Origin: Scyliorhinus canicula | Taxonomy: Eukaryota | DNA: 64,000 nt | Assembly: GCF_902713615.1 (NCBI RefSeq) | Contig: NC_052162.1 | Coordinates: forward strand, 127,124,653 to 127,188,652 | Direction: 5' to 3' | In this document: positions 4,735-58,155 of the stretch, in pieces | How positions within the stretch are numbered: the first letter of the stretch is position 1 | How the letters are laid out: each line of letters starts with the position of its first letter | The notes under the pieces: model-generated | The model's input: the letters and a program-made list of their open reading frames with translations, nothing else | Database searches by the model: none | What the model was told of the DNA's origin: nothing | Translations under genes and position numbers: made by a program

Positions 4735-5337
4735 ATGGAGAAACCGTGGAAATGTGGGGACTGTGGGAAGGGATTCAGAGCCCCATCCCAATTGGAAGCT
4801 CATCGACGCAGTCACAGTGGGGAGAGGCCGTTCACCTGCTCTCAGTGTGAGAAGGGATTCATTCGGATGTGTAACCTGCAGAGACACCAGCGAGTCCATA
4901 CTGGGGAGAGGCCATTCACCTGCTCTGTGTGTGGGACAGGATTCGCTCGGTTGTGCAACCTGCAGACACACCAGCGAGTCCACACCGGGGAGAGGCCATT
5001 CACCTGCTCCCAGTGTGGGAAGGGATTCAGTGAGTTATCCAACCTGCGGGTACACCTACGAGTCCACAGCGGGGAGAAGCCGTTCACCTGCTCGGACTGT
5101 GGGAAGAAATTCTCTAAGTCATCCAACCTGGTGACACACCAGCGAGTTCACACCAGGGAGAGGCCATTCACCTGCTCTGTGTGTGGTAAGAGATTCAGCG
5201 ATTCATCCACTCGGCTGACACACCAGCGCACTCACAGTAAGGAGAAGCCGTTCACCTGCTCCGAGTGTGGGAAGGGATTCACTCGGTCAACCTACCTGCT
5301 CAAACACCAGCAGGTTCACATCGGGAAGAGGCGGTGA
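4735..5337 (+). CDS. C2H2 zinc-finger protein A, 200 aa, 7 fingers, no effector domain
   Basis: [10 protein letters not shown] start (agcATGG), 7 CxxC-x12-HxxxH units with TGERP linkers; splice acceptor ttttacag ends 4371; its promoter is not in the window. Confidence 0.85.
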
Positions 5338-6117
5338 TACGATCTCTTATTTTATCTTCAATTAAGAGTTACAGGCTTGGTTGACTGGAGGAGTCCAAAA
5401 ATACAACTTTATTTGCGAATCATTCACCTTGATTCTCTTTAATAGAAAAACTAAATCAAAACTTTGATCAAATAATACATCATAACATAATAAAGAGAAT
5501 CAATACATGGTTCAGAATTTCTGCAAGCGTAAGTTGAGAATAAAGTTTGAATCATGAAGCCTTATTCTTAATGAAATTCTGATCAATGGTCTAATCCCTC
5601 ATTTACTCCCATTGGTTTCTAATTCTCAGCTGAAGCTTCCTGATTTATTCAAATATCTGTCTATCACTTAGAAAATGATTTGTTATCCAAGCATTCGTCA
5701 ATTCTTAAGATTTACTGATCTCCATCAAATTAATTAAATGTCTACGTGCTCCCGCCCCTTGTACCAATCCTACAAATATAAGGTGCTTGCATTAACCTTG
5801 CTGTTGCTGAGGCTTTGATACATTTTTATTACTAAATGTTGCTGTTGCTAAGGCTATGATACATTTTCATTACAGATTGTCTTGAGTAACAATGGTTTAT
5901 TAATTACATGGGGCTTTTATGCAATTTTTCATGAAACAATGTTAGATTCCTGCTTAGCAGTCCTTATTTATTATCTGAAACAATGACTATCTTTCCATAT
6001 TAGCCTTGTGGATATTAGATTCACTGTCTGTGCTCTGAATTAAGAAATGTACTGCATCAATTCTTAAAGGCATCAATAAAGCAATATATCAGTGAATCAA
6101 TCAATCAGTAAATATCT
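5335..6117 (-). mobile_element. LTR-like element A (about 780 bp) inserted in the last ZNF linker; supplies the stop codon
   Basis: Ends TGATA...TATCT; flanks GGCGG/GGCCG (GGCTG/GGCCG in other copies) as 5-bp TSD; ZNF sequence resumes after it. Orientation inferred from a reverse AATAAA near the left end. Confidence 0.7.
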
Positions 6118-6199
6118 GGCCGTTTATCTGCTGTGTGTGTGGGAAGCGTTTTCCCTGTTATCCACCCTGCGCAGCTACCAGCGAGTTCACAAGTGATGA
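6118..6199 (+). pseudogene. Orphaned terminal zinc finger (copies start at 12188, 26732, 37277, 46778, 58156)
   Basis: PFICCVCGKRF..LSTLRSYQRVHK** followed by about 120 bp homologous to the 3' end of the - strand ZNF genes (LRYQRAHK*). Confidence 0.8.
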
Positions 6200-7062
6200 C
6201 AGTGTTTGGGCTCTGCTGTTATTGCTGCTGTTAATCACACCCAGGACTGAACCATGTTCATTCTGACACTTGGTGAAGTGGGAGGGTCAGAGGGTTTCTC
6301 TCTGCTGGACTCAGTGAGGGGGGTGAGGAGATTTAGGAGAACCAGGGATGAGGGACTTCAGTTATTTGGAGAGACTGGAGGAAATTGTTCTCTTCAGACC
6401 ATAAGATCCATTCGGGAAGGAGGCCATTCAACCCATTGATACCATGCTGGCTCTCTGTGGAGAAAACTGGTCAGTCCCGTTTCCCTAAAATGTCCATCCA
6501 AATTTCATTTTGAAATAGTTCAGGGTGTCTGCTTCCACCATCCTCACGGGCAGCGAGTTCCACACTCACTGTGCACCTCCCTCCGCACCCGCATCTTTAT
6601 ACTTTCATTCTTTCATGGGATGTGGTGTTTCTGGCCAGGCCCAGCATTTGTTGTCCGTCCCTAATTGCTGCTTTAGAAGGTGTTGGGGGAGGCACCTTCT
6701 TGAACTGCTGAAGTCTGTGTGGTGTCGGTAACACCCCGGCAACAGACCGGTGACACCCACAATGCTGTCAGGGTGGGAGTTCCAGAATAGAAATTCAGAA
6801 CAGACAATTCTAGTTTCTGTGGAATATTCTTTCCTCTCATTCCCCAAGATCTGCAAGTCTCCATCCCAAACACTCTCCCTCCATTCTCACCCTGCTCTAA
6901 TATTCACCCTCCCAATTCTCCTGAAGGTGCTGATTCAGGCTGACTGACAGATCCCTGCTCACTGCTTCCTGTCCTGAACACAGAGACCTGAAAATCTTCC
7001 TGCAGGCTGCCAGACAGATGTATGTCTACATTACTGGACAGAGAATGTGTGTAATATACAGA

Positions 7063-11383: not shown

Positions 11384-12187
11384 TGATACGAACTCTGATT
11401 TTATCTTCAAATAAGAGTCACAGGTCCCGTTGCTTTGAGGTGTCTAAAATACAACCGTATTTGCTCAACATTCACCTTGATTCTCTAAAATTGAAAAAAA
11501 TAAATCAAATCTTAGATCCATTAATACATCAAAACATAATAACGAGAGTTAAACAAAAACATAAGAAAATATTAGAACATCAATAGATGGTTCAGAATTT
11601 ATTCAAGCATAAGTTCAGAACAAAACTTTAATCATGAAGCCTTATTCTTAATGAAATTCTGATCAATGATCTAATCCCTCATTTACTCTCATTGGTTTCT
11701 GCTTCTCAGCTGAAGCTTCCTGATTTATTCAAATATCTGTCTATCACTGAGAAAATGATTTGTTATCCAAGCATTGGGCATTACTTAACATTTATTAATG
11801 TCCATCATATTAATGAAATGTCTATGTGCCCCCGCTACATGTACCAATCCTACAAATATAAGGTGCTTGCATTAATCTTGCTGTTGCTAAAGCTTTGATA
11901 CATTTTTACTACTGAATGTTGCTGTTGTTCAGGTTGTGATGCATTTTCACGACAGATTTTGTTGAGGGACAATGGTTTGTTCATTACAAGGGGCTTTGAA
12001 GCAACTTTTCATGGAACATTGTTAGATTCCAGCTTAGCAGTTCTTATTTATTATCTGAAACAATGACTATCTTTCCACATTAGCCTTGTGGATATTCCAT
12101 TCACTGTCTGTGCTGAATTAAGAAATGTGTTGCATCAATTCTTAAAGGCACCAATAAATCCGTAAAGCAATAAATCAGTGAATATCT
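11384..12187 (-). mobile_element. LTR-like element A copy
   Basis: ggctg|TGATAC...TATCT|ggccg. Confidence 0.7.
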
Positions 12188-13130
12188 GGCCGTTTATCTG
12201 CTGTGTGTGTGGGAAGCGTTTTCCCTGTTATCCACCCTGCGCAGCTACCAGCGAGTTCACGAGTGATGACAGGGGTTGGACTCGGCTGTTATTGCTGCTG
12301 TTAATCTCACCCAGGACTGAACCATGTTCATTCTGACACTTGGTGAAGTGGGAAGGTCAGAGGGTTTCTCTCTGCTGGACTCAGTGGGGGGGGGGGGGGC
12401 TGAGGAGAGTTACGAGAACGGCACCAGGATTGAGGGACTTCAGTTAGTTGGAGTTACTGGAGCAGCTGAAATTGTTCTCTTCAGACCAGAGAGTCATTCG
12501 GGAAGGGAAGAAGGCCATTCAGCCCATTGACTTCATGCTGGCTCCTGTGGAGCAAACCGGTCAGTCCCATTTCCCTCAAGTGCCCATCCAACTTTCATTT
12601 TGAAATAGTTCAGGGTGTCTGCTTCCACCATCCTCACGGGCAGCGAGTTCCAGGTCATTACCACTCACTGTGCACCTCCCCCCACACTCACATCTTTCTA
12701 TTTTCATTCTTTCATGGGATGTGGTGTTTCTGGCTTGGGTCCAGCATTTGTTCTCCATCCCTAATTGCTGCTTTAGAAGGTGGTGGGTGAGGCACCTTCT
12801 TGAACTGCTGAAGTCTGTGTGGTGTCGGTAACAGCCCAGTAACACCCCCAGTGCTGTCAGGGAGGGAGTTCCAGGATTTGGACCCAGCGACAGTGGAGAA
12901 CAATGATATATATCTTCCTCGTACTAAAGCTTAAATGTGTGTCCCCCTTGTCCTTCTCCCATCATCTAATGGGAGCAGCTTTTCTTTGTCTTGTTCACCT
13001 ATATCCAATCACCCCTCAACCTCCTTTGCTCCAAAGTGAACAATCCCGGCTTCTCCATATGAGCCTTGTGGTTAAAATCCCTCCTCCAGAGAACCACTCG
13101 AAAAGTTACAGCCCAGAAAGAGGGCATTGT

Positions 13131-23556: not shown

Positions 23557-24579
23557 ATGGAGAAACCGTGGAAATGTGGGGACTGTGGGAAGGGATTCAG
23601 AGTACCATCACGACTGGAAGCTCATCGACGCATTCACACTGGGGAGAGGCCCTTCACCTGCTCCCGGTGTGGGAAGGGATTCGCTCAATTATCCAACCTG
23701 TGGATACACGAGCGCGTTCACACTGGGGAGCGACCATTCACCTGCTCTCAGTGTGGGAATGGATTTGCTCTGTTATCCAGCCTGCGGACACACCAGCGAG
23801 TTCACACTGGGGAGAGGCCGTTCACCTGCTCTAAGTGTGAGAAGGGATTCGCTCACTTATCCAGCCTGCGGACACACCAGCGAGTTCACACTGGGGAGAA
23901 GCCATTCACCTGCTCTCAGTGTGGGAAGGGATTCGCTCACTTATCCAGTCTGCGGAAACACCAGCGCGTTCACACTGGGGAGAAGCCATTCACCTGCTCT
24001 CACTGTGAGAAGGGATTCGCTCACTTATCCAGCCTGCAGACACACCAGCGAGTTCACACTGGGGAGAAGCCATTCACCTGCTCTCAGTGTGGGAAGGGAT
24101 TCACTCGGTTATACAGCCTGAAGAAACATCAGCGAATTCACACTGGGGAGAGACCGTTCACCTGCTCTCAGTGTGAGAAGGGATTCATTCGGTTATCCAA
24201 CCTGCTGACACACCAGCGAGTTCACACTGAGGCGAAGCCATTCACCTGCTCTCAGTGTGAGAAGGGATTCATTCGGTTATCCAACCTGCAGACACACCAG
24301 CGAGTTCACAATGGGGAGAAACCGTTCACCTGCTCTCAGTGTGAGAAGGGATTCGCTCACTTATCCAACCTGCGGACACACCAGCGAGTTCACACTGGGG
24401 AGAAGCCGTTCATCTGCTCTTTGTGTGGGAAGAGATTCACTCAGTCATCTCATCTGCAGGCACACCAGCGAGTTCACACTGGGGAGAGTCCGTTCACCTG
24501 CTCCGAGTGTGGGAAAGGATTCACTCGGTCAATCTTCCTGCTCAAACACCAGCAGGTTCACATCGGGAAGAGGCTGTGA
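23557..24579 (+). CDS. C2H2 zinc-finger protein C, 340 aa, 12 fingers
   Basis: accATGG MEKPWKC; intact frame to GKRL*; acceptor ends 23190. Confidence 0.88.
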   Translation: MEKPWKCGDCGKGFRVPSRLEAHRRIHTGERPFTCSRCGKGFAQLSNLWIHERVHTGERPFTCSQCGNGFALLSSLRTHQRVHTGERPFTCSKCEKGFAHLSSLRTHQRVHTGEKPFTCSQCGKGFAHLSSLRKHQRVHTGEKPFTCSHCEKGFAHLSSLQTHQRVHTGEKPFTCSQCGKGFTRLYSLKKHQRIHTGERPFTCSQCEKGFIRLSNLLTHQRVHTEAKPFTCSQCEKGFIRLSNLQTHQRVHNGEKPFTCSQCEKGFAHLSNLRTHQRVHTGEKPFICSLCGKRFTQSSHLQAHQRVHTGESPFTCSECGKGFTRSIFLLKHQQVHIGKRL

Positions 24580-25124
24580 TACAATATCTTATTTTATCTT
24601 CAAATAAGAGTCACAGATCCAGTTGATTGCAAGTGTCTAAAAATACAACTTTATTTGCTAAACATTCACCTTGATTCTATTTTTAAAAAAACTTAATAAA
24701 AACTTAGATCCAATAATACATCAAAACATAACAATGAGAGTTAAACGAAAACATAAAAAAAATTAGAAAATCAATAGATTGTTCAGAATCAGTTCAGAAC
24801 AAAGCTTTAATCATGAAGCCTTATTCTTAATGAAATTCTGATCAATGGTCTAATCCCTCATTTACTCTCATTGGTTTCTAATTCTCAGCTGGAGATTCCT
24901 GATTTATTCAAATATCTGTCTATCACTTAGAAAATGATTTGTTATCCAAGCACTGGTCATAACTTAAGATTTACTAATCTTCATCATATTAATTAAATGT
25001 CTACGTGCCCCCACCACGTGTGCCAATCCTACAAATATAAAGTTCTTGCATTAACCTCGCTGTTGCTAAGGCTTTGATACATTTTTCTTGCTAAATGTTG
25101 CTGTTTCTAAGGCTTTGATATATT

Positions 25125-26449
25125 TGTTATGGGCCAGGGTTTAGAGCATTGTTCTTCAAACTTTTTTTCCGGGGACACATTTTTACCAACCGGCCAACCT
25201 TCGGGACCCAACCCGGCCGACCTTCGGGACCCAACCCGGCCGATCTGCGCGACCCAACCCAGCCGACCTTCGCGACCCAACCCAGCCGACCTGCGCGACC
25301 CAACCCAGCCGACCTGTGCGACCCACCATTTTCTCTGACCTTGTTTGCTGCTGATAAAAATGGAGGAAATGGTTTTGGGTCCCTTTGTCCTCGTACCTGC
25401 TCCTCCAATGGAACCTGTTGGATGAAGGTGAAGCCTTCCGGTGTCGGAAAGTATGGAGCCTCCATCTGTCCAAAGTTCTGCATTTTTTTCCTGTAAGATT
25501 TTATGAAATAAAACCCACCGAACTTGTAAAAAAAATAATAAAATAAAAGAAAAAAAAATTTAATGAATAAAATAAATCAATACAATTAATTAACTCCCCC
25601 GAACTTGTAAAACAAAAAGCTGCGACCGGTTAAAAAATAAGCGGCCGCACTGCGCATGCGTGCCCGATCATCGGCGCACATGCGCATAGTTTTGCGTTTG
25701 CGGCCGGTGATCTGACACGCATGCGCAGTGAAGGCGCATTTTTTTTTACACGTTTGTGGCCATTTTGAAGGCAGCTTGCAGCCTGCGTTATTAACAGCTG
25801 GCTGCTGCAGCTGTTGCACGCTGATTTGCGCAATCTGGAGCGCCGCGACAGACGGCTCCACCGCCCTCCCGGTACCCACCGGGTGGCACCCTGAGTTTGA
25901 CAATGCCTGGTTTAGAGAACCCCAAAGTGTATCATGGAGTTCACCTGACCCACGACCTTTAATAGATTCTGGCTATGGGGAGCACATGGGCCCACTCTGC
26001 AGGTGTGATGCAACAGAACTCTACAGTACTTTTAAATTAAAACAATGTTTATTTATGAAACCAGTTCACACTTTATAAACCCACAGTAAACATCTGAACA
26101 ATATCAACACCAATAAATCCCCCAAAGAATACAGTGCTCTCTGAGTAACTCTGAGTTCATCTTTCCTTGCAACATCCATAAGACAAAAAGAACCCTTTTT
26201 ACAGAAAGACATCAGGTTGAATGTCACTGCTGAGAACAGTTACCACTTTGAAATCACCAAATGAACATTCATAAGCTTGCAGACATTCCGACACATCTTG
26301 CTGTGACTGCAGCTTCTCCAAATCTAAAAGGAAACTAAACACACCCTGTAGCTGCAAGCCCAAAGTGAAAGTCAAAGCAGACAGGCATCTCCACCCACAC
26401 TCAGACATCACTGATAAACACCATTTCTTAAAGGTACTCTCACATGTCA
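25125..26449 (-). mobile_element. Solo LTR B (Gypsy-like) nested in element A; copy 35796-36995
   Basis: TGTTAT...ATGTCA/ATGACA; flanks tatt/catt; absent in units A, B, E, F. Confidence 0.8.
25147..25909. mobile_element. Non-autonomous hAT (Charlie/Buster-like) transposon; copy 35818-36449
   Basis: 8-bp TSD GTTTAGAG; imperfect TIRs CA(G/T)TGTTCTTCAAACT / AGTTTGACAATGCCTG; about 22-bp subterminal repeats. Confidence 0.88.
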
Positions 26450-27479
26450 CATTTTTATTACTAAATGTTGCGATGGTTTTGATACATTTTCATTACAGAT
26501 TGTGTTGAGGAACAATGGTTTATTATTTACAAGGGGCTTTTATGAACCATTCATGAAACAATGTGAGATTCTTGCTTCGCAGTTCTTATTTATTATCTGA
26601 AACAATGACTATCCATCCACATTAGCTTTGTGGATATTCCATTCACTGTCTGTGCTCTGAATTAAGAAATGTGTTGCATCAATTCTTAAAGGCACCAATA
26701 AATCAGTGAATCAATAAATCAGTAAATATCTGGCCATTTATCTGCTGTGTGTGTGGGAAGGGTTTTCCCTGTTATCCACCCTGCGCAGCTACCAGCGAGT
26801 TCACGAGTGATGACAGGGGTTGGACTCTGCTGTTATTGCTGCTGTTAATCACACCCAGGACTGAACCATGTTCATTCTGACACTTGGTGAAGTGGGAGGG
26901 TCGGAGGGTTTCTCTCTGCTGGACTCAGTGAGGGGGGGGTGAGGAGATTTACGAGAACGGCACCAGGAATGAGGGACTTCAGTTAGTTGGAGTTACTGGA
27001 GCAGCTGAAATTGTTCTCTTCAGACCATAGAGTCATTCGGGAAGAGAGGGAGGCCATTCAGCCCATTGATCCCATGCAGGCTCTCTGTGAAGCAAACCGG
27101 TCAGTCCCATTTCCCTCAAGCACTCTATCCTAAGCTCATTCCCCCAGCTAGGTAAATGGTAAAGTCACCATAGTCCCAGATGACCATAGGCATATCCCCT
27201 TTAAGGGGCGGGTGGGGGGGAGCTGACTGCTGGTGATTTAACCTCAGGCAAGGATCAAGTTGACAAGCTCCCACTGACACTAGTGGGGAGAGTGCAGGCA
27301 GGAACCTCGATCCCTGATCACTCTTCCTTTTCACTCAGCCCCCCCTCCATTTATTGTGTGCGGGTGGAAGGGGGCAGCCATCGCAAAACCCCTCTTGCAC
27401 ACGTGTATATGTGTAAAAATGAAGCAACCACTTTATTTCACCATCCCCCGAGTTTGTTGTGGAAGGTATTGATCGAGGA

Positions 27480-29410: not shown

Positions 29411-30173
29411 CATGACCAATCGCCGCGCATCCCCCATATCACTAAGTAATAGATTTGTGTAGTGGTTCAGTATACGTATATATATTATGATTCTTGGGCA
29501 AACCCCTTAAGAACCAAGAATGTTTTGATGAAATCGATAAAAGTTTGAGATTGAAGACACTCAGTCGGCAAATAAAACCACAGGATTCCGTAGGTTTTGA
29601 ACAACAAAAATAAAGTCTACGATACAAAGTCAGAAAGATAAAACACTGTACATTATCTACCTTAAATTCTAACCTTCACGTTGGAATAGAGGGACGTGTG
29701 AATAAACACATATAATGTGCTTGAATAGGCAACACACCATAAATGGCAGGTGCGACCAAGACAGAGTCCATGGAAATCTCACCCAAACGTCAGTAAACAC
29801 TGAGTCAGCCAATCTCACTGAAAATTAGTCACTTGTGAGGGATTTTCGTGTTCACCTTCAAAGATCTAACCGTGGAATTCTGTCCTTTCCTGGCCCGCAC
29901 TGCAGACTCAACAGAGCAGAGACAAATGTATTTATTTTGGATCTACCTGCCGTGGAGGTAAAACACTGTTTAATATCCTGGATGAAATAAATGGACTTCA
30001 TCAGCTTTTGCAGATCATTTCAGTGGAGATGTGCTCTCCCAGGCTAAAAGAACATCGGCCCACTGGAAGTCGTGAGACCAGCCAGTTCAGCAGAAAGCAA
30101 CCCTCCAACCCTCCCACTTCACCAAGTCTCAGAATGAACATGGTTCAGTCCTGGATGTGATTAACAGCAGCAA

Positions 30174-30500
30174 AAACATAGAACATTACAGTGCAGTACA
30201 GGCCCTTTGGCCCTCAATGTTGCGCTGACCTGTGATACCCCTCCAAAGTCCTTCTACACTACTCCCTTGTTGTCCATATGCCTATCCAATGACCATTTGA
30301 ATGCGTTTAGTGTTGGCGAGTCCACTAATGTTGCAGGCAGTGCATTTCACGCCCTTACTACTCTCTGAGTAAAGAACCTACCACGGACATCTGTCCTATA
30401 TCTATCTCCCCACAATTTACAGCTATGTCCCCTCGTGCTGGACATCACCATCCGAGGAAAAAGGCTCTCAATGTCCTCTGATCATCTTGTATTTGGAAAG
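30174..30500 (-). mobile_element. CR1 3' fragment inserted downstream of - strand ZNF pseudogene
   Basis: Reverse-complement match to the 3' end of the CR1 at 950-1250; absent at the paralogous site near 41770. Confidence 0.8.
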
Positions 30501-30544
30501 TTTAATTCCCCCATAACAACTACAGCACAATCGAATCTCTGTCA

Positions 30545-30967
30545 TCACTTGTGAGCTCGCTGGTATCTCAGCACGTGGGGTGACCGATTGAATCCCTTCC
30601 CACACCGAGGGCAGGCAAACAGCTTCTCCCCAGTGTGAACGCGCGGGTGCCTCTGCAGGTTGGATGACTGAGTGAAACCCTTCCCGCAAACGGGGCATGG
30701 AAATGGCCTTTTGCCAGTGTTAACTCGCTGGTGTCAAATGAGGGCGGATGAATCACTGAATCCCTTCCCACACTGAGAGCAGGCGAATGGCCTCACCCCG
30801 GTGTGAATGCGCTGGTGTGTCAGCAGGGCAGATGAATGAGTGAATACCTTCCCACACTTGAAGCAGGTGAATGGCCTCTCCCCAGTGTGACAGAGTCGAT
30901 GAGTTTTGAGAGGAGATGGGGAACTGAGTCCCTTCCCACAATCCCCACATTTCCATGGTTTTTCCAT
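30545..30967 (-). pseudogene. - strand partner C2H2 ZNF pseudogene, about 5 finger units
   Basis: [10 protein letters not shown] start; premature TGA at 30734; lost His ligands; ends LRYQRAHK*. Confidence 0.85.
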
Positions 30968-31296: not shown

Positions 31297-32368
31297 TGTC
31301 ATGTCAGAGTACCTTTAAGAAATGGGCGTTTACGAAATGCACCTTTAAGAAATGGGTGTTTATCAGTGATGTCAGAGAGTGGGTGGAGCTGGGCTGTCTG
31401 GCAGCTTTTTCCTTTCGTTTTAGGCTATTTGCTGCAGGATGTGTTTTCGTTTCTGTAGAAGGGGCTTTACTTGGCGGGTTAGTTGCCTTAATACACGGTA
31501 TTCTTTCTAACCGTCTTCTTGACTATATTTCATGGCAATAGGCACTTGGCAAAGCATGATGGATATATATTAGCCTTATTTCAGTCAAGAAGTTCTGCAT
31601 GTAATAGCAGAAGGTCAGTCTATGTAAACAAGTGCACAGCTGCACATTGTTGCTGACAGCAGACAATTGTTATTGCTCGTAGACTACGAATTCAAGGCCT
31701 GTTGTTTAAGGCTGCTCGCTTTTCTGTCTCTGGGCTTATCAGTGGAATGCCTCGTTTTTCTAAATATTGCTTATTGAACAATATAAAGTACTGCCTTGCC
31801 TTTGTACAGTGGGGAACAATTAGAAGGACTTTGGTCACTCTAAATCCCCCCACAAAACTTTGTGTTAAAATAAAGGACCTTTGGCGAAAACTCGAAGTGC
31901 TGGTATTTTTTCCTCAACAGTTTCGTTCTCAGAGCTGGATAGCTGCAGTCACAGTCAGAAGGTGTATGAGTCTCTCTCTCTGTAATCTAAAAATTGTAAA
32001 TCGATCCTTTGGTGATTTAAAACTAATAACTGCTCTTAGTAGTGGCTTTAACATGAATTGCTTCTGTTTAAAGGTTTTTTTAAAGTCTTATGGATGTAAA
32101 AAGGACAGCTTGAGTATTACTTAGTGTTGTATTCTTTGGGGCTGTATTTGAATTGATGGTTGCTAAGATGTTCACTGTATGTTTTAAAAAGATTAACTTG
32201 AATTCATAGAATGAACATTGTTTTGCTTTTAAAAAATACTTTTCCATTTCTGTTGTACCACACCTGTAGAGTGGCCCGCGTGCTCCCCATACCACACTCT
32301 ATTACAAGTTGTGGGTCGGGTGAATTCCATGATACACTTTGGGGTTCTCTAAACCCTGGCCCATAACA
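31297..32368 (+). mobile_element. Solo LTR B inserted at the splice acceptor of the - gene; copy 42757-43184
   Basis: ctgt|TGTCAT...ATAACA|ctgt, 4-bp TSD. Confidence 0.85.
31454..31919 (+). mobile_element. 466-bp solo LTR nested in LTR B
   Basis: gtttc|TGTAGA...TCAACA|gtttc; AATAAA near the 3' end; absent from the 42757 copy. Confidence 0.82.
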
Positions 32369-34128: not shown

Positions 34129-35238
34129 ATGGAGAAACCGTGGAAATGTGGGGACTGTGGGAAGGGATTCAGTGCCCCATCACGACTGGAAGCCCATCGA
34201 CGCAGTCACACTGGGGAGAGGCCGTTCACCTGCTCCCGTTGTGAGAAAGGATTCACTCACTTATCCAGCCTGCGGACACACCAGCGAGTTCACACTGGGG
34301 AGAGGCCGTTCACCTGCTCCCAGTGTGAGAAGAGATTCGCTCACTTATCCAGCCTGCGGAAACACCAGCTAGTTCACACTGGGGAGAGGCCCTTCACCTG
34401 CTCTCAGTGTGAGAAGGGATTCACTCACTTATCCAACCTGTGGACACACCAGCGCGTTCACACTGGGGAGAGGCCATTCACCTGCTCTCAGTGTGAGAAG
34501 GGATTTGCTCACTTATCCAGTCTGCGGAAACACCAGCTAGTTCACACTGGGGAGAGGCCGTTCACCTGCTCTCAGTGTGAGATGGGATTCATTCGGTTAT
34601 CCAACCTGCGGGCGCACCAGCGGGTTCACACTGGAGAGAGGCCGTTCACCTGCTCTCAGTGTGAAATGGCATTCGCTCACTTATCCAACCTGCGGACACA
34701 CCAGCGCGTTCACACTGGGGAGAAGCCATTCACTTGCTCTCAGTGTGAGAAGGGATTCGCTCTGTTATCCAGCCTGCGGACACACCAGCGAATTCACACT
34801 GGGGAGAGGCCATTCATCTGCTCTGTGTGTGGGAAGGGATTCACTCAGTCATCTCACCTGCAGGCACACCAGCGAGTTCACACTGGGGAGAGGCCGTTCA
34901 CCTGCTCTCAGTGTGGGAAGGGATTCACTCGGGCATCTTTCCTGCAGGAAACACCAGCGAGTTCACACTGGGGAGGAGGCCGTATCATCTGCTCTGTGTG
35001 TGGGAAGGGATTCACTCGGTCATCTCACCTGCAGATACACCAGCGAGTTCACACTGGGGAGAGGCCATTCATCTGCTCTGAGTGTGGGAAGGGATTCAGC
35101 GATTCATCCTCCCGGCTGTCACACCAGCGAATTCACAGTAAGGAGAGACCATTCACCTGCTCCGAGTGTGGGAAGGGATTCACTCGGTCAACCTTCCTGC
35201 TCAAACACCAGCAGGTTCACATTGGGAAGAGGCTGTGA
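34129..35238 (+). CDS. C2H2 zinc-finger protein D, 13 finger units (12 intact); alternative in-frame ATG at 34108
   Basis: accATGG MEKPWKC; finger 10 scrambled by three +1 insertions; acceptor ends 33789. Confidence 0.82.
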   Translation: MEKPWKCGDCGKGFSAPSRLEAHRRSHTGERPFTCSRCEKGFTHLSSLRTHQRVHTGERPFTCSQCEKRFAHLSSLRKHQLVHTGERPFTCSQCEKGFTHLSNLWTHQRVHTGERPFTCSQCEKGFAHLSSLRKHQLVHTGERPFTCSQCEMGFIRLSNLRAHQRVHTGERPFTCSQCEMAFAHLSNLRTHQRVHTGEKPFTCSQCEKGFALLSSLRTHQRIHTGERPFICSVCGKGFTQSSHLQAHQRVHTGERPFTCSQCGKGFTRASFLQETPASSHWGGGRIICSVCGKGFTRSSHLQIHQRVHTGERPFICSECGKGFSDSSSRLSHQRIHSKERPFTCSECGKGFTRSTFLLKHQQVHIGKRL

Positions 35239-37276
35239 TACGATCTCTTATTTTATCTTCAAATAAGTGTCACGGGTCCAGCTGATTGCAGATGTCTAAA
35301 AATAGAACTTTATTTGCTAAACATTCACCTTGATTCTGTTTTTAAAAAAACTTAATAAAAACTTAGATCCAATAATACATCAAAACATAACAATGAGAGT
35401 TAAATGAAAATATAAGAAAATATGAGAAAATCAGTAGATGGTACAGAATTTATTCAAGCATAAGTTCAGAACAAAGCTTTAATCATGAAGCCTTATTCTT
35501 AATGAAATTCTGATCAATGTTCTAATCCCTCATTTACTCCCATTGGTTTCTAATTCTCAGCTGAAGCTTCCTGATTTATTCAAATATCTGTCTATCACTT
35601 AGAAAATGATTTGTTATCCAAGCACTGGTCGTGACTAAGATTTACTAATCACCATCAAATTGATTAAATGTCTATGTGCCCCCACCACGTGTGCCAATCC
35701 TATAAATATAAGGTGCTTGCATTAACCTTGCTGTTGGTAAAGCTTTGATACATTGTTGTTGCTAAATGTTGCTGTTGCTAAGGCTTTGATATATTTGTTA
35801 TGGGCCAGGGTTTAGAGCAGTGTTCTTCAAACTTTTTTTCCTAGGACACATTTTTACCAACCGGCCAACCTTCGGGACCCAACCCGGCCGACCTTCGCGA
35901 CCCACGCCGGCCGACCAGCGTGACCCACCATTTTCTCTGACCTTGTTTGCTGCTGACAAAAGTGGAGGAAATGGTTTTGGGTCCCTTTGGCCCTCGTACC
36001 TGCTCCTCCAATGGAACCTGTTGGATGAAGGTGAAGCCTTCCGGTGTCGGAAAGTATGGAGTCTCCATCTGTCCAAAGGTTGGCATTTTTTTCCTGTCAG
36101 ATTTTATCAAATAAAACCCCCCGAACTTGTAAAAAAAAAATGAAAAAAATAAAAATTAAATGAATAAAATAAATAAATAAAATGAATAAACTCCCCCGAA
36201 CTTGTGAAACAAAAAGCTGCGACATAGTTTTGCGTTTGCGGCCGGTGATCTGACACGCATGCGCAGTGCAGCCGCATTTTCTTTACACGTTTGCGGCCAT
36301 TTTGAAGGCAGCTTGCAGCCTGCGTTATTAACAGCCGGCTGCTGCAGCTGTTGCACGCTGATTTGCGCAATCTGGAGCGCCGCAACAGTCGGCTCCGATC
36401 CCTCCCAATACCCACTCGCTGGTCGCGCCTCTGAGTTTGACAATGCCTGGTTTAGAGAACCCCAAAGTATATCATGGAGTTCACCTGACCCACGACCTTT
36501 AATAGATTGTGGTTATGGGGAGCACACGGGTCCATTCTGCACGTGTGATGCAACAGAAATCTACAGTACTTTTAAATTAAAACAATATTTATTTATGAAT
36601 CCAGTTCACACTTTATAAACCCACAGTAAAATCTTAACACCCATCAACACCAATAAATCCCCCAAAGAATACAGTGCTCTCTGAGTAACTCTGAGTTCAT
36701 CTTTCCTTGCAACATCCATAAGACAAACAGAACCCTTTTTACAGAAAGACATCAGGTTGAATTTCACTGCTGAGAACAGTTACCACTTTGAAATCACCAA
36801 ATGAACATTCACAAGCTTGCAGACATTCCGACACATCTTGCTGTGACTGCAGCTTCTCCAAATCTAAAACAAAACTAAACACACCCTGTAGCTGCAAGCC
36901 CAAAGTGAAAGTCAAAGCAGACAGGCAGCCCAGCTCCACCCACACTCAGACATAACTGATAAACACTCAATTCTTAAAGGTACTCTCACATGACACAATT
37001 GTATTACTAAATGTTGCTAAAGCTGTGATACATTTTCATTACAGATTGTGTTGAGGAACAATGGTTTATTATTTACAAGGAGCTTTTATGCAACTTTTCA
37101 TGAAACAATGTTAGATTCCTGCTTAGCAGTTCTTATTTATTATCTGAAACAATGACTATTTTGCCACATTAGCCTTGTGGATATTCCATTCACTGTCTGT
37201 GCTGAATTAAGAAATGTACTGCATCAATTCTTAAAGGCACCAATAAATTAGTGAATCAATAAATCGGTTAATATCT
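35236..37276 (-). mobile_element. LTR-like element A with nested LTR B and hAT
   Basis: Same junctions as 24577-26731. Confidence 0.7.
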
Positions 37277-38084
37277 GGCCATTTATCTGCTGTGTGTGTG
37301 GGAAGGGTTTCCCTGTTATCCACCCTGCGCAGCTACCAGCGAGTTCACGAGTGATGACAGGGGTTGGACTCGGCTGTTATTGCTGCTGTTAATCACACCA
37401 GGACCTGAACCATGTTTCATTCTGACACTTGGTGAAGTGGGAGGGTCGGAGGGTTTCTCTCTGCTGGACTCAGTGAGGTGGGTGAGGAGATTTACGAGAA
37501 CGGCACCAGGAATGAGGGACTTCAGTTAGCTGGAGAGACTGGAGCAGCTGAAATTGTTCTCTTCAGACCGTAGAGTCATTTGGGAAGAGAGGGAGGCCAT
37601 TCGACCCATTGATCCCATGCTGGCTCTCTGTGGAGCAAACCGGTCAGTCCCATTTCCCTCAAGCACTCTACCCTAGGCTCATTCCCTCAGCTAGGTAAAT
37701 GGGAAAGTCACCATAGTCCCAGATGACCACAGGCATTTCCCCTTAAAGGGGCGGGTGGGGGGAGCTGACTGCTGGTGATTTAACCTCAGGCAAGGATCAA
37801 AGTTGAGAAGCTCCCACTGACACTAGTGGGGCGAGTGCAGGCGGGAACCCCGAGCTCTGATCACGCTTCCTTTTCACTCAGCCCCCCCTCCATTTATTGT
37901 GTGAGTGTGGAAGGGGGCAGCCATCGCAAAACCCCTCTTGCACATGTGTTAGTGTAAAAATGAAGCAACCACTTTATTTCACCATCCCCCGAGTTTGTTG
38001 TGCAAGTTATTGATTGAGGATTTGAACATGTCTAAAGTGAAGGGTTGCAGAAAAATACCCCACCGTTTTTAACAGGAGAAAGAC

Positions 38085-40869: not shown

Positions 40870-41795
40870 AAGTTGCCGCTCAGTGTTGAACGATCAGGTG
40901 GGGTTACTGGGATAGGTGAGGGATTGGGCCGAGGTAGGGTGGTCTTTCAGAGGGACGGTGCAGACTTGATGAGGCGAATGACCGAGTTCTGCACTGTTGG
41001 GATTCTATGACATCACCAATTGCTGCGCATCCCCCCATATCACTAAGCAATAGATTTGTGTAGTGGTTCAGTATACGTATATATATTATGATTCTTGGGC
41101 AGACCCCTTAAGAACCAAGAATGTTTTGATGAAGTCGATAAAAGTTTGAGATTGAAGACACTCAGTCGGCAAATAAAACCACAGGATTCCGCAGGTTGTG
41201 AACAAACATAAATAAAGTTTACGATACAAAGTCAGAAAGATAAAACACTGTACATCATCTACCTTAAATTCCAACCTTCACTGTGGAATAGAGGGACGTG
41301 TAAATAAACACATATAATGAGCTCGAACACACACCACACCATAAATGGCAGGTGCAACCAAGACAGAGTCCATGGAAATCTCACCCAGACGTCAGTAAAC
41401 ACTGAGTCAGCCAATCTCACTGAAAATCAGTCTCTCGTGAGGAATTCACGTGTTCACCTTCAAAGATCTAACCGTGGAATTCTGTCCTTTCCTGGCCCGT
41501 ACTGCACTCGACAGAGCAGAGAGAAATGTATTTATTTTGGATCTACCTGCCGTGGGGGTAAAACACTGTTTAATATCCTGGATGAAATAACTGGACTTCA
41601 TCAGCTTTTGCAGATCATTTCAGTGGAGATGAGCTCTCCCAGGCTAAAAGAATATCGGCCCACTGGAAGTCGTGAGACCGGCCAGTTCAGCAGAAAGAAA
41701 CCCTCCGACCCTCCCACTTCAAGTCTCACAATGAACATGGTTCAATCCTGGATGTAATTAACAGCAGCAAAAACAGCAGAATCCAATCCCTGTCA

Positions 41796-42432
41796 TCACT
41801 TGTGAGCTCGCTGGTATCTCAGCAAGTGGAGTGACTGATTGAATCCCTTCCCACACTGAGAGCAGGCAAACAGCTTCTCCCCAGTGTGAACGCGCCAGTG
41901 CTTCTGCAGGTTGGATGACTGAGTGAAACCCTTCCCGTACACGGGGCAGGGAAATGGCCTGTTGCCAGTGTGAACTCGCTGGTGTCTAATGAGGGCGGAT
42001 GAATCTCTGAAACCCTTCCCATATGCATGGCAGATGGACAGCTGAATCCCTTCCCACAATCAGAGCAGGCGAATGGCCTCTTCCCAGTGTGAACCTTATG
42101 GTGCGTGTGCAGGCTGGCTGACTGAGTGAAGCCCTTCCCACACACACACACACCAGATGAATGGCTTCTCCCCGGTGTGAACCCGCTGCTGTGTTTGCAG
42201 GGCGGATGAATCACTGAATCCCTTCCCACACTGAGAGCAGGTGAATGGCCTCTCCCCGGTGTGAATGCGCTGGTGTGTCAGCAGGGCAGATGAATGAGTG
42301 AATGCCTTCCCACACTTCCCACACCTGAAGCAGGTGAATGGCCTCTCCCCGGTGTGACAGCATCGATGAGTTTCGAGAACAGATGGGTAACTGAGTCCCT
42401 TTCCACAATCCCCACATTTCCAGTTTCTCCAT
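41796..42432 (-). pseudogene. - strand partner C2H2 ZNF pseudogene, multiple frameshifts
   Basis: [17 protein letters not shown] units spread over three frames; ends LRYQRAHK*. Confidence 0.85.
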
Positions 42433-43506
42433 GGTGTTAGTGTCCTTGCGTTTCTCCAGGTCCAATGATCATTTCCAGCCTCGTCCACACAGAGAACACT
42501 TTTACAGTCTCTCGCCACTGAATGGTGCGATATTTTCTCTTCCGATGTAACCGTTTAAAGCTCGGTCCACAGTCAGTTCACTGGAAAACTCTCACTCAGA
42601 TCTTTGTGTGTCTTGGTGCATTTCCAATCACACATTGAAGCAGACAGAACAGCCAAACATTTGTCCTTCTAGATTCAAAGGCCGATGATATTCAGGTCAC
42701 AATGAATTGAATGAGGATGTCAGATCCTGACCGTACATCCACATCTGATATCCTGTTGTCATGTGCGAGCACCATTAAGAAATAGGTGTTTAAGAAATGC
42801 ACCTTTAAGAAATGTGTGTTTATCTGTGATGTAGAGTGTGGGTGGAGCTTTGCTTTCTGTCAGCTTTTTACTTTCGTTTTAGGCTGTTTGCTCCAGGGTG
42901 TGTTTTAGTTTTGTTTTCAGAGCTGGATAGCTGCAGTCACAGCCAGAAGGGGTATTAGTCTCTCTCTCTCTGTCATCTAAAAACTGTAAATTGATCCTTT
43001 GGTGATTTAAAACTTGAGTTCATAGAATAAACATTGTTTTGTTGTTAAAAATGCTTTTCCATTTCTGCTGTACCACACCTGTAGAGTGGGCTGTGTGCTC
43101 CCCATACCACAATCTATTACAAGTTGTGGGTCGGTTAACTCCATGATACACTTTGGGGTTCTCTCTAAACACTGGCCCATAACACTGTCAAGGGAGTTTA
43201 CAAAAGTCATTGGTGTCAGAACAGGATAGAAATTCAGAACAGACAATTCTAGTTTCTATGGAATATTCTTTCCTCTCATTTCCCCAAGATCTGTAATTCT
43301 CCAACCCACACACTTTCTTTCCATTCTCATCCTCCTCTTTCTAATATTCACCCTCCCAATTCTCCTGAAGGTGCTGATTCAGGCTGATTGACAGATCCCT
43401 GCTCACTGCTTCCTGTCCTGGACACAGAGACCTGAAAATCTTCCTGCAGGCTGCCAGACAAATGTCTGTCTATATTACTGGGCAGAAAAGGTGTGTAATA
43501 TACAGA

Positions 43507-46028: not shown

Positions 46029-46777
46029 TGACACGATCCGGTTGATTGGTGGTGTCTAAAAATACAACTTTATTTGCTAATCATTCACCATCATTCTCTT
46101 AAATAAAGAAATTAAATCAAAACCTAGATCAAATAATGCATCAAAACATAATAAAGAGAGTTAAACAAAAACATAAGAAAATATTAGAAAATCAATAGAT
46201 GGTTCAGTATTTCTTCATGCATCAGTTCAGAATAAAGCTTTAATCATGAAGCCTTATTCTTAATGAAATTCTGATCAATGGTCTAATCCCTCATTTACTC
46301 TCATTGGTTTCTAATTCTCAGCTGCAGCTTCCTGATTTATTCAAATATCTGTCTATCACTTAGAAAATGATTTGTTATCCAAGCATTGGTCATAACTTAA
46401 GATTTACTAATCATATTAATGAAATGTCTATGTGCCCCCACCACATGTACCAATCCTACAAATATAAGGTGCTTGCATTAACCTTGCTGTTGGTAAAGCT
46501 TTGATACATTTTTACTACTGAATGTTGCTGTTGCTGAGGCTTTGATACATTTTCATTACAGAATGTATTAAGGAACAATGGTTTATTCATTACAAGGGGC
46601 GTTGATGCAACTTTTCATGGAACATTGTTAGATTCCTGCTTAGCAGTTCTTATTAATTATCTGAAACAATGAAGATCTTTCCACATTAGCCTTGTAGATA
46701 TTCCATTCTCTGTCTGCGCTGAATTAAGAAATGTGTTGCATCAATTCTTAAAGGCACCAATAAATCAGTAAATATCT
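46029..46777 (-). mobile_element. LTR-like element A copy
   Basis: ggctg|TGACAC...TATCT|ggccg. Confidence 0.68.
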
Positions 46778-46799: not shown

Positions 46800-47556
46800 T
46801 GATAGATCTGTACTTTGGTCGATATATCTTTTGTGTTGCCGCACGATATATCACCCGACTGAACTTAAAACTGAGCTTCATGTGTGAGGTAAATTGTAGT
46901 TTTATTCAGTCAGTTTTCAAATGTCTCTTGATCAGGTCAGTTTGCTTGCAAATACAGAGTTTTAAAGGTTTGCTTTGTCCAAGCAAGTACAGATGACTGA
47001 GTTAAATTCAATGCAGATTACAGCTCTTGATGTTTCCTTCAAATTAAAATACACGATACAGAGAAGTTGAAAATAGACAACGTGGCAGCTTTCAGAGCAA
47101 AGCGCAGGAAATAGTTAAAGACCGACATAAGTTGATTCCGGAATAATTTGCTCAAAATGGGCACCTATTTTTAAGGTAATTGCTATTGCTAATGTTCTGG
47201 CCCCTTTCTGTCTGTGATTGGGTCATAATAATTATAGTTCATTTTATTCGATAGAAATGGCTGTCCATCACATTTTTAGTATGGGGTGACTGTAACATCT
47301 CGTTCCCACCACACGTTATCAGTTCTCATGACCACTGAACGAGGAACTTTGCCCAGATTCACAAACCAACGAATGAGTGTGTCTGCGGTTTTAATCTAAC
47401 CATTCTCATGCTATTCTGCTGTTTTCACTGCCTCTCTGTTTGAACTCTGTGACCTTAGTGAACCATTTCGATCCTGAATCACTTTATAAAGCCATTTTGA
47501 TTTTGAACCATTTCTTCCTTTTAAACTTATTATATATTAAAACTAGATTTCTATCA
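46800..47556 (-). mobile_element. 757-bp solo LTR inserted in the orphan finger; copy 58177-58932
   Basis: gtgtg|TGATAGA...TCTATCA|gtgtg; empty sites near 6135, 12205, 26750, 37295. Confidence 0.85.
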
Positions 47557-56576: not shown

Positions 56577-57347
56577 CTGGAGAAACCGTGGAAATGTGGG
56601 GACTGTGGGAAGGGATTCATAGCCCCATCACGACTGGAAGCTCATCGACGCATTCACACTGGGGAGAGGCCGTTCACCTGCTCTCAGTGTGAGAAGGGAT
56701 TCGCTCACTTATCCAGCCTGCATAGACACCAGCGAGTTCACACTGGAGAGAGGCCGTTCACTTGCTCTGTGTGTGAGAAGGGATTCGCTCACTTATCCAC
56801 CATGCGGACACACCAGCGAGCTCACACTGGGGAGAAGCCATTCACCTGCTCTCAGTGTGGGAAGGGATTCACTCGGTTATCCAGTCTGCGGAAACATCAG
56901 CGAGTTCACACTGTGGAGAAGCCGTTCACCTGCTCTCAGTGTGAGAAGGAATTCGCTCACTTATCCAGCCTGCGGAGACACCAGCGAGTTCACACTGGAG
57001 AGAGGCCGTTCACTTGCTCTGTGTGTGAGAAGGGATTCGCTCACTTATCCACCATGCGGACACACCAGCGAGCTCACACTGGGGAGAAGCCATTCACCTG
57101 CTCTCAGTGTGGGAAGGGATTCACTCGGTTATCCAGTCTGCGGAAACATCAGCGAGTTCACACTGTGGAGAAGCCGTTCACCTGCTCTCAGTGTGAGAAG
57201 GAATTCACTCACTTATCCAACCTGCGGACACACCAGCGAGTTCACACTGGGGAGAGTCCGTTCACCTGCTCCGAGTGTGGGAAAGGATTCACTCGGTCAA
57301 TCTTCCTGCTCAAACACCAGCAAGTTCACATCGGGAAGAGGCTGTGA
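56577..57347 (+). CDS. C2H2 zinc-finger protein F, 9 fingers; start ATG mutated to CTG
   Basis: accCTGG LEKPWKC; frame intact to GKRL*; acceptor ends 56223. May be a young pseudogene. Confidence 0.6.
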   Translation: MEKPWKCGDCGKGFIAPSRLEAHRRIHTGERPFTCSQCEKGFAHLSSLHRHQRVHTGERPFTCSVCEKGFAHLSTMRTHQRAHTGEKPFTCSQCGKGFTRLSSLRKHQRVHTVEKPFTCSQCEKEFAHLSSLRRHQRVHTGERPFTCSVCEKGFAHLSTMRTHQRAHTGEKPFTCSQCGKGFTRLSSLRKHQRVHTVEKPFTCSQCEKEFTHLSNLRTHQRVHTGESPFTCSECGKGFTRSIFLLKHQQVHIGKRL

Positions 57348-58155
57348 TACAATATCTTATTTTATCTTCAAATAAGAATCACAGATCCAGTTGATTGCAG
57401 ATGTCTAAAAATACAACTTTATTTGCTAAATATTCACCTTGATTCTGTTTTTAAAAAAACTTAATAAAAACTTAGATCCAATATCCAAACATAACAATGA
57501 GAGTTAAACGAAAACATAAGAAAACATTAGAAAATCAATAGATTGTACAGAATTTATTCAAGCATATGTTCAGAACAAAATTTGAATCATGAAGCCTTAT
57601 TCTTAATGAAATTCTGATCAATGGTCTAATCCCTCATTTACTCTCATTGGTTTCTAATTCTCAGCTGAAGCTTCCTGATTTATTCAAATATCTGTCTATC
57701 ACTGAGAAAATGATTTGTTACCCAAGCACTGGTCATAACTTAAGATTTACTAATCTTCATCATATTAATTAAATGTCTACGTGCCCCAACACGTGTACTA
57801 ATCCTAAAAATATAAAGTGCTTGCATTAACCTTGCTGTTGCTTAGCTGTGACACTTTTATTACTGAATGTTGCTGTTGCTGAGGCTTTGATACATTTTCA
57901 TTACAGAATGTGTTGAGGAACAATGGTTTATTTCATTACAAGGGGCGTTGATGCAACTTTTCATGAAACAATGTTAGATTCCTGCTTAGCAGTTCTTATT
58001 TATTATCTGAAACAATGACTATCTTTCCACATTAGCTTTGTGGATATTCCATTCTCTGTCTGCGCTGAATTAAGAAATGTACTGCATCAATTCTTAAAGG
58101 TACCAATAAATCAGGAATGCAATAAATCAGTGAATCAGTAAATCAGTAAATATCT
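57345..58155 (-). mobile_element. LTR-like element A copy
   Basis: ggctg|TGATAC...TATCT|ggccg. Confidence 0.7.

What the first reader, a model, noticed from the sequence alone, without database searches (positions are those of the whole stretch)
5330..6199. An LTR's first three bases are the stop codon of the + strand ZNF genes
Seen: each + array ends AAG AGG CTG TGA (CGG TGA in A), and this TGA begins an about 780-bp AT-rich element (TGATA...TATCT). On its far side the interrupted linker resumes (ggccg tttatctgc = PFIC), with GGCYG duplicated. A stranded last finger and 3' sequence follow, matching the uninterrupted ends of the - strand paralogs. This TGA is the in-frame stop in A, C, D and F; B and E frameshift earlier. 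Inference: one ancestral insertion truncated the protein, donated the stop and 3' UTR, and was then amplified six times.
Basis: partly seen in the sequence, partly recalled or inferred. Interest (0 to 1): 0.78.

Follow-up and report, generated by a model that had tools for sequence, protein, structure and literature searches.

The report
Mobile-element insert ends six shark ZNF genes
One old 0.8-kb transposon-like insertion landed in the last linker of a shark zinc-finger gene, its first three bases became the stop codon, and the cut gene was then copied six times in tandem; this is a clean example of a known process, and the claim that the insert is an LTR is not proven.

Summary
Six + strand C2H2 arrays (A-F) end AAG AGG CTG TGA (CGG TGA in A). 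The TGA is the first codon of a 749-811 bp, 31-33% GC, non-coding insert. A 5-bp duplication flanks it (GGCTG or GGCGG on the left, GGCCG or GGCCA on the right).

Removing the insert and one duplicate restores a canonical H-IGKR(L/P)F-IC linker. The restored sequence aligns without a gap at the junction to the intact ends of two - strand paralogs.

All six units share the site, the duplication, the odd 3' end (..ATATCT) and a 1-nt deletion in the stranded finger. So there was one insertion, followed by tandem duplication with later recombination between units.

The lost finger was already degenerate (Tyr in place of the first His). A, C, D and F keep open frames ending at this TGA.

Two parts of the reading are not shown:
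- **LTR identity.** It has TG but not CA ends, no other copy in the window, and 8-bp tandem units at its 3' end like a non-LTR tail.
- **Donated 3' UTR.** Only contigs were available. The sole poly(A) hexamer kept in all six units is AATAAA about 40 nt before the insert's end.

A 155-bp core of the insert and the old 3' block are unexpectedly conserved.

The scan had not noted this feature before. Related earlier notes describe a solo LTR amplified inside a satellite and a Penelope copy at a ZNF stop codon.

The parts
5254..5334 (+). Last retained finger of gene A plus the linker remnant IGKR(R/L). The final codon (CGG in A, CTG in B-F) is host sequence and part of the left copy of the target-site duplication.
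5330..5334 (+). Left copy of the 5-bp target-site duplication (GGCGG in A, GGCTG in B-F).
5335..5337 (+). TGA: the first three bases of the insert and the in-frame stop of gene A. The same holds at 24577-24579 (C), 35236-35238 (D) and 57345-57347 (F).
5335..6117 (+). Insert, copy A: 783 bp, 31.9% GC, 12-26 stops in every frame, no tRNA-like head and no Rfam family. It is transposon-like; its class is unresolved, with a solo LTR as the leading candidate.
5546..5700 (+). Core of the insert. It is nearly invariant among the six units (9% variable columns against 34-58% beside it) and is covered by many more DNA contigs than the rest of the insert.
5798..5879 (+). 41-bp tandem duplication inside the insert. 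The nested insertion of units C and D sits in this region.
6075..6080 (+). AATAAA, the only poly(A) hexamer after the stop that is kept in all six units. It lies about 40 nt before the insert's 3' end, and the GT-rich start of the orphan finger follows it.
6083..6117 (+). Run of 8/16-bp tandem units (AAATCAGT GAATCAAT) at the 3' end of the insert. The unit number differs among copies A-F.
6118..6122 (+). Right copy of the target-site duplication (GGCCG; GGCCA in C and D).
6118..6196 (+). Stranded last finger (PFICCVCGKRF / SLLSTLRSYQRVHK*). All six units carry a 1-nt deletion relative to the - paralogs. The old stop TGA is at 6194-6196. Tyr replaces the first zinc-binding His, as in the paralogs.
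6197..6315 (+). Old 3' block shared with the - strand paralogs and, judging by contig depth, with many ZNF genes of the genome. It has 11% variable columns against 42% downstream.
11384..12187 (+). Insert, copy B. The gene is frameshifted before the TGA.
24577..26731 (+). Insert, copy C, carrying a nested 1.3-kb insertion at 25126-26448.
35236..37276 (+). Insert, copy D, carrying the same nested insertion at about 35797-36990.
46029..46777 (+). Insert, copy E, with a 33-bp deletion near its 5' end. The gene is frameshifted earlier.
57345..58155 (+). Insert, copy F.
41684..41990 (-). Uninterrupted end of a - strand paralog, equivalent to an empty site: linker GEKLFAC, last finger ...LLRYQRAHK*, and the same 3' block.
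30084..30720 (-). Second uninterrupted - strand paralog end. A LINE fragment (30178-30480) lies inside its 3' block.

Best explanation
A single mobile-element-like sequence of about 0.8 kb integrated into the coding exon of an ancestral shark C2H2 zinc-finger gene. It landed exactly in the linker between the second-to-last and last fingers and duplicated 5 bp of target (probably GGCTG).

The insert begins TGA and the integration fell between codons. Translation therefore stops right after the host codon CTG (Leu), and the protein loses only its last finger. That finger was already degenerate (C2-YH).

The shortened gene stayed usable. It was then multiplied, with insert and stranded finger, by tandem segmental duplication into at least six units, which later exchanged segments by recombination or gene conversion.

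Inferred, not shown: the mRNAs now end at the AATAAA near the insert's 3' end, helped by the GT-rich remnant of the orphan finger just downstream. The class of the insert is open. A solo LTR is the leading candidate and a non-LTR retroposon is the main alternative.
For: - **Junctions and duplication.** They are identical in six units.
- **Empty-site test.** Removing the insert and one duplicate from unit C gives an alignment to the - paralog end with no gap at the junction, running through linker, finger, old stop and 3' block. The same match appears by BLAST and by eye.
- **Stop codon.** ORFs of A, C, D and F end at the insert's TGA.
- **Shared derived states.** All six have a 1-nt deletion in the orphan finger and a terminal ...ATATCT.
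- **Age.** The insert's divergence (87-93% pairwise) is like that of its flanks.
- **Later recombination.** Unit F is C-like left of about 5730-5780 and E-like right of it.
- **Retained function.** Cys/His scaffold and linkers are kept and changes concentrate in helix positions. dN/dS is 0.35-0.67 for most pairs over the first 87 codons.
- **No coding or known RNA.** The insert has no coding capacity, no tRNA head and no Rfam family.
- **Poly(A) signal.** The only poly(A) hexamer kept in all six units is AATAAA at 6075. Unit A has none for 2 kb after the old stop.
- **Junction contig.** A 168-bp contig with no mismatch spans the junction at 5303-5470 in a run guessed to be RNA.
Against: - No second, independent copy of the insert was found: none in the window. 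In DNA contigs at 80% likeness most of the insert is not clearly more abundant than its ZNF flanks. Its status as a transposon therefore rests on the duplication and the empty-site comparison.
- The two duplicate copies differ at one of five bases in every unit.
- Expression, the poly(A) site and the absence of splicing across the insert are untested. The runs are contigs and their RNA label is a guess.
- Units B and E are pseudogenes, and F has CTG where the others have the presumed ATG start. Not all copies are working genes.
Confidence: 0.85

Rival explanations
1. The insert is specifically a solo LTR, in sense orientation, left by LTR-LTR recombination of a Gypsy- or ERV-type element. Its R region supplies the poly(A) signal.
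For: - It has a 5-bp duplication, typical of LTR integrases, and begins TG.
- The termini TGATA...TATCT form a 4-of-5 inverted repeat.
- Its size of about 0.8 kb fits.
- A TATA-like AAATATAAGG at about 5771 and AATAAA at 6075 lie in the same orientation.
- It has no coding capacity.
- Earlier notes report many solo LTRs in this genome (unchecked).
Against: - The 3' end is CT, not CA, in all six copies.
- With cleavage after AATAAA at 6075, U5 would be only about 15-25 nt.
- Poly(A)-type hexamers and TATA-like strings also occur on the other strand, so the orientation is not fixed.
- No paired or dispersed copy was seen in the window.
- There is no clear excess of copies over the flanks in DNA contigs, apart from the core.
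- The 3'-terminal tandem 8-mers are not an LTR trait.
Confidence: 0.45
2. The insert is a non-LTR retroposon: a 5'-truncated LINE 3' UTR, a long LINE-dependent non-autonomous element, or a retroposed transcript. It would have been inserted by target-primed reverse transcription, with the 8/16-bp units as its 3' tail.
For: - Tandem units (AAATCAGT/GAATCAAT), 2-5 per copy, lie directly at the 3' end and vary in number between copies. AATAAA sits just upstream.
- The 5' end has no recognisable terminal structure.
- Short duplications of variable length occur with such elements (established knowledge).
Against: - There is no reverse-transcriptase remnant and no tRNA/5S-type head.
- The last unit deviates (AAATATCT).
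- Contig depth does not rise towards the 3' end; it peaks in the middle.
- The tail differs from that of the LINE fragment seen in the window (..GTAATGTTCTATGTT).
Confidence: 0.3
3. The segment is not a transposon. It would be filler DNA captured at a staggered double-strand break, or an organelle or other copied fragment, and the 5-bp duplication would be a repair by-product.
For: The segment occurs only behind ZNF arrays in the window, and no family membership could be shown.
Against: - A clean 5-bp duplication with exact restoration of the reading frame.
- The core is present in far more DNA contigs (about 76) than the flanks, and some contigs match only the core.
- Words of the core occur in runs of two other organisms.
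- No source copy lies in the window.
Confidence: 0.1
4. The segment is removed from the mRNA as an intron, so the real protein still carries the last finger.
For: Unit A has GT right after ..GGCG (G|GTGATA), and there is an AG at ..AATCAG|TAAATATCT.
Against: - Units B-F have T at position -1.
- No polypyrimidine tract precedes the AG.
- The spliced frame would read RKYLAVYLLCVWEA..., which destroys the two Cys.
- The orphan finger carries a frameshift in all units, and in E and F a 755-bp insertion.
- None of the listed joints links 5337 to 6118, although the table is truncated.
Confidence: 0.03

Closest known systems
Gene truncation by a retrotransposon that brings a stop codon and poly(A) site, e.g. 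mouse Zfp69 and IAPLTR1a (PMC2696593)
   Same: A retroelement-type insertion shortens a zinc-finger transcription-factor gene. The stop, and probably the poly(A) signal, lie in or next to inserted sequence.
   Different: In Zfp69 the 7-kb IAP sits in an intron and acts as a gene trap through a splice acceptor, giving a loss-of-function allele. Here the insert lies in the coding exon, removes only one degenerate finger, and leaves open frames that were later amplified. Use of the poly(A) site is not shown here.
Transposon-derived poly(A) sites and 3' ends of vertebrate genes (Lee, Ji and Tian 2008, PMC2553571)
   Same: An inserted repeat provides AATAAA in sense orientation downstream of a coding region.
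   Different: That work rests on mapped poly(A) sites in human and mouse. Here the site is predicted only from a hexamer kept in six paralogs and a GT-rich host sequence downstream.
Solo LTR carried along by tandem duplication of its host array
   Same: One insertion is multiplied passively because its host sequence is tandemly duplicated.
   Different: There the host is an intronic satellite without coding consequence. Here the host unit is an ~11-kb gene-bearing segment and the insert defines the end of the protein.

Membership tests
Solo LTR of an LTR retrotransposon or endogenous retrovirus | Flanked by a 4-6 bp target-site duplication | tested here: met
   The duplication is 5 bp: GGCTG/GGCCG, with 4 of 5 bases identical in every unit. 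Removing one copy restores the linker.
Solo LTR of an LTR retrotransposon or endogenous retrovirus | Termini 5'-TG...CA-3' within short inverted repeats | tested here: not met
   The 5' end is TGATA and the 3' end is TATCT in all six copies. TG is present but CA is absent, and the inverted repeat matches at 4 of 5 positions. One post-insertion A>T change in the ancestor could explain this, but that cannot be shown.
Solo LTR of an LTR retrotransposon or endogenous retrovirus | Other copies in the genome, some as direct pairs around a gag-pol interior, each with its own duplication | not testable with these tools
   There are no copies in the 64-kb window besides the six inherited ones. No tool searches the whole genome. 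Contigs of one DNA run show about 9-20 distinct contigs over most of the insert and about 76 over the core.
Solo LTR of an LTR retrotransposon or endogenous retrovirus | U3-R-U5 layout with promoter and poly(A) signal in one orientation | tested here: inconclusive
   A TATA-like string at about 5771 and AATAAA at 6075 lie on the + strand, but AATAAA strings also occur on the - strand, and U5 would be very short.
Non-LTR retroposon (LINE 3' fragment or LINE-dependent element) | 3' end made of poly(A) or short tandem repeats | tested here: inconclusive
   8/16-bp units in 2-5 copies lie next to the 3' end and vary between units, but the final unit deviates and there is no poly(A) run.
Non-LTR retroposon (LINE 3' fragment or LINE-dependent element) | Reverse-transcriptase remnant (LINE) or pol III head (SINE) | tested here: not met
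   Every frame has 12-26 stops and the longest open stretch is 45 codons. ARAGORN finds no tRNA-like sequence.
Transposon-derived gene end (stop plus poly(A) site from an insert) | The in-frame stop lies inside the inserted sequence | tested here: met
   The TGA is bases 1-3 of the insert and closes the long ORF in A, C, D and F.
Transposon-derived gene end (stop plus poly(A) site from an insert) | mRNA 3' ends map inside the insert | not testable with these tools
   All runs available were contigs, without ends, strand or a confirmed RNA label.

The most novel reading that the evidence does not exclude
The insertion was co-opted rather than merely tolerated. On this reading, its 155-bp core (5546-5700), together with the retained old 3' block (6141-6315), is kept by selection in all paralogs as a 3'-UTR or chromatin control module. 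The insertion would then have founded a new, expanding subfamily of shark ZNF genes that lack the degenerate terminal finger.
Probability: 0.15. Interest if true: 0.5.

Novelty: new member of a known kind. Interest (0 to 1): 0.3.

Why it matters
This is a well-resolved natural example of a transposon-type insertion redefining the C-terminus, and probably the 3' end, of a transcription-factor gene without killing it, after which the new form spread by tandem duplication. The ancestral state is preserved in cis (the stranded finger and old stop) and in neighbouring paralogs. It adds to the picture of how ZNF clusters and mobile elements shape each other outside mammals. It does not reveal a new mechanism: an immediate TGA is expected in a noticeable fraction of in-frame insertions of elements that begin TG. 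The unexplained conservation of two non-coding blocks is the only part that could lead further.

Tried and rejected
- **Intron reading.** Weak splice sites, a broken frame and a decayed orphan finger argue against it. It is rejected as unlikely, though RNA joints could not be checked fully because the joint table is truncated.
- **Known RNA family or structured RNA.** Rfam gives only a chance-level mir-927 match (E 0.96). Fold z-scores are -0.7, +0.3 and -2.05.
- **SINE head or organelle tRNA.** None found.
- **Pfam scan of the six-frame translation.** Stops were counted instead.
- **Long terminal inverted repeats (DNA transposon or MITE).** Only 4 bp match.
- **Other copies in the window.** BLAST and nhmmer find none.
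- **Reads.** The single read-laying run at 80% likeness was swamped by the ZNF family. It gave contigs only, so there are no ends, no strand and no safe copy number.
- **Core in other organisms.** The core's words occur at a small share (0.16) in runs of two other organisms. This is not interpretable without laying them.
- **Annotated proteins ending ...HIGKRL.** The homology search was dominated by generic multi-finger proteins, and nine exact look-ups were not in the collection.
- **Earlier findings.** Searches by words, place and sequence returned no note on this element.
- **dN/dS on the last 56 codons.** Uninformative, because the second-to-last fingers are not in register between units.

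Full report
**What is there**

The window holds six + strand C2H2 zinc-finger arrays (A-F), spaced about 6 to 13 kb apart. Each ends ...CAC ATC GGG AAG AGG CTG TGA (CGG TGA in A).

At that TGA a 749-811 bp stretch of 31-33% GC begins. Units C and D are longer because of a nested insertion. The stretch starts TGATAC (TGACAC in E) and ends ATATCT in all six units.

It is preceded by GGCTG (GGCGG in A) and followed by GGCCG (GGCCA in C and D). After that comes TTTATCTGC..., the F-I-C start of one more finger. This finger runs to an old stop codon (A 6194-6196, B 12264-12266, C 26808-26810, D 37352-37354, E 47614-47616, F 58990-58992).

**Is it an insertion?**

Two - strand paralogs in the same window have uninterrupted ends. 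Their stops are at 41798-41796 and 30547-30545.

I removed the AT-rich stretch and one copy of the 5-mer from unit C and aligned the result to the paralog at 41690-41990 (-). The alignment runs through four features in order, with no gap at the junction:
- the second-to-last finger;
- the linker (GGGAAGAGGCTGTTTATCTGC against GGGGAGAAGCTGTTTGCCTGC);
- the last finger and the old stop;
- about 115 bp of 3' sequence.

The restored peptide H-IGKR(L/P)F-IC has the canonical seven residues between the last His of one finger and the first Cys of the next. This is the empty-site test, done with paralogs.

The paralog has CTG at the linker codon. The target was therefore probably GGCTG, and the Leu that ends the protein is host sequence. 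The right-hand copy later changed to GGCCG.

**One event or six?**

All six units share four things:
- the same junction and the same 5-bp duplication;
- the same unusual final T of the insert;
- a 1-nt deletion in the stranded finger relative to the - paralogs (44 against 45 nt between TGTGGG and TACCAG);
- insert divergence of 87-93% pairwise, in the range of the flanks.

So there was one insertion, followed by tandem duplication of a gene-bearing unit.

The units later exchanged pieces. Unit F is 95-99% like C left of about 5730-5780 and 94-99% like E to the right. C and D share a 1.3-kb nested insertion. E and F share a 755-bp insertion inside the stranded finger.

**Consequence for the protein**

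Only the last finger is lost. That finger has Tyr in place of the first zinc-binding His, both in the stranded copy (..LRSYQRVHK*) and in the intact paralogs (..LLRYQRAHK*). The loss was probably of little cost.

The retained fingers keep all Cys/His and linker residues, and changes concentrate in the helix. dN/dS over the first 87 codons is 0.35-0.67 for most pairs. This fits genes that went on working, but the sample is small.

F has CTG where the others have the ATG of MEKPWKC.

**What is the insert?**

It has no coding capacity: 12-26 stops per frame. It has no tRNA-like head, no Rfam family and no long terminal inverted repeats.

Features that favour a solo LTR:
- a 5-bp duplication;
- a TG start;
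- a 4-of-5 terminal inverted repeat (TGATA/TATCT);
- a size of about 0.8 kb;
- a TATA-like string at about 5771 and AATAAA at 6075 on the same strand.

Features that argue against it:
- the 3' end is CT, not CA;
- U5 would be only about 20 nt;
- similar signals occur on the other strand;
- nhmmer with the six-copy profile finds no other copy in 64 kb;
- the 3' end consists of 8/16-bp tandem units (AAATCAGT GAATCAAT) whose number varies from about 2 to 5 between units. This is a hallmark of non-LTR retroposon tails (my own knowledge, not tested here).

Against a LINE fragment: there is no RT remnant, and contig depth peaks in the middle, not at the 3' end.

I therefore do not file it as an LTR. 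I rate LTR about 0.45, non-LTR retroposon about 0.3, and other origins lower.

**Evidence from public runs**

Twenty runs of one organism, from seven studies, hold the stretch. All are kept as contigs.

Laid at 80% likeness, the finger region is swamped by the genome-wide ZNF family. In the DNA run X15, contig coverage was:

| Region | Distinct contigs |
|---|---|
| Most of the insert | about 9-20 |
| Core 5525-5755 | about 76, some matching only the core |
| Flank 6320-6490 | 1-7 |

The flank has diverged below 80% between some units, so this comparison does not show a dispersed family. It shows only that the core is shared more widely.

A 168-bp contig without mismatch bridges the junction (5303-5470) in a run guessed to be RNA. 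The guess is unconfirmed, and contigs show neither ends nor strand.

A few words of the core also occur in runs of two other organisms.

**The 3' end**

After the TGA, the only AATAAA/ATTAAA kept in all six units is AATAAA at A-position 6075, about 40 nt before the insert's end. The GT-rich start of the stranded finger (CTGCTGTGTGTGTGGG) follows it.

Unit A has no such hexamer for 2 kb after the old stop. The - paralogs have one about 265 nt after theirs.

This makes a poly(A) site at the insert's 3' edge a reasonable prediction, but it is an inference.

**Unexplained conservation**

Two non-coding blocks are far better kept among the six units than their surroundings:

| Block | Variable columns | Comparison region | Fisher p |
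|---|---|---|---|
| Insert core 5546-5700 | 9% | 34-58% beside it | about 3e-15 |
| 6141-6315 (end of the stranded finger plus old 3' block) | 11% | 42% downstream | about 2e-13 |

Neither block shows a convincing RNA fold. Selection on a 3'-UTR or chromatin element, or local gene conversion, could explain this. I could not separate the two.

**Organism**

The best named ZNF relatives are from sharks and a ray: Mustelus asterias at 73%, Pristiophorus japonicus and Hemitrygon akajei. Earlier notes of this scan call the genome a catshark (unchecked).

**Comparison with what is known**

Retroelement insertions that shorten genes and bring stop and poly(A) signals are well documented. One example is the IAPLTR1a insertion in mouse Zfp69, which makes a truncated mRNA by intronic polyadenylation (PMC2696593). 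Transposon-derived poly(A) sites are also known to be common (PMC2553571).

The present case differs in three ways. The insert lies in the coding exon, it removes only a degenerate finger, and it was amplified with the gene.

An immediate TGA is no more than a mild coincidence for an element that begins TG and lands between codons.

**Verdict**

- Observation: confirmed.
- Interpretation: partly supported.
- Novelty: a new member of a known kind.
- Interest: modest.

Noticed in passing
window 5546-5700 and 6141-6315 (and the equivalent places in units B-F): Two non-coding blocks are nearly invariant among six paralogous units whose neighbouring sequence varies at 34-58% of columns. The first lies inside the insert; the second is the old 3' end of the gene. 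The cause is unknown (selection or gene conversion).
   Followed up: partly
window 25126-26448 and about 35797-36990: Units C and D share a 1.3-kb insertion nested in the 41-bp repeat region of the insert. Parts of it recur at 32005-32355 (-), 43019-43164 (-), 42801-42947 (-) and 31341-31446 (-), so it belongs to a dispersed repeat.
   Followed up: partly
window 46802-47556 and 58179-58932: Units E and F share a 755-bp insertion inside the stranded finger, 98% identical between the two units. It has imperfect inverted ends (ATAGATCTG... / ...CAGATTTCTAT) and possibly a short TGTG duplication. Its class was not determined.
   Followed up: no
window 56577-56579: Unit F has CTG where A-D have the ATG of MEKPWKC, the presumed start codon of this ZNF family, so F may lack that start.
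   Followed up: no
window about 5730-5800 (equivalent place in unit F, about 57750-57830): A recombination or gene-conversion breakpoint lies inside the insert. F matches C upstream and E downstream.
   Followed up: partly
window 30178-30480 (-): A LINE 3' fragment with an RT C-terminus (tail ..GTAATGTTCTATGTT) is inserted into the conserved 3' block of the - strand paralog. It is related to the RT ORF at 287-1165.
   Followed up: no
protein P0084 (Mustelus asterias, NCBI): An annotated protein starts MEKPWKC like the genes here and runs from six fingers straight into a LINE reverse-transcriptase C-terminus.
   Followed up: no
window 6214-6300: The ~90 bp just after the old stop (..GCTGCTGTTAATCACACCCAGGACTGAACCATGTTCATTCTGACACTTGGTGAAGTGGGAGGG..) has very high summed contig depth in all four runs. 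It is far above its neighbours, so it is probably shared by very many ZNF genes of this genome.
   Followed up: no
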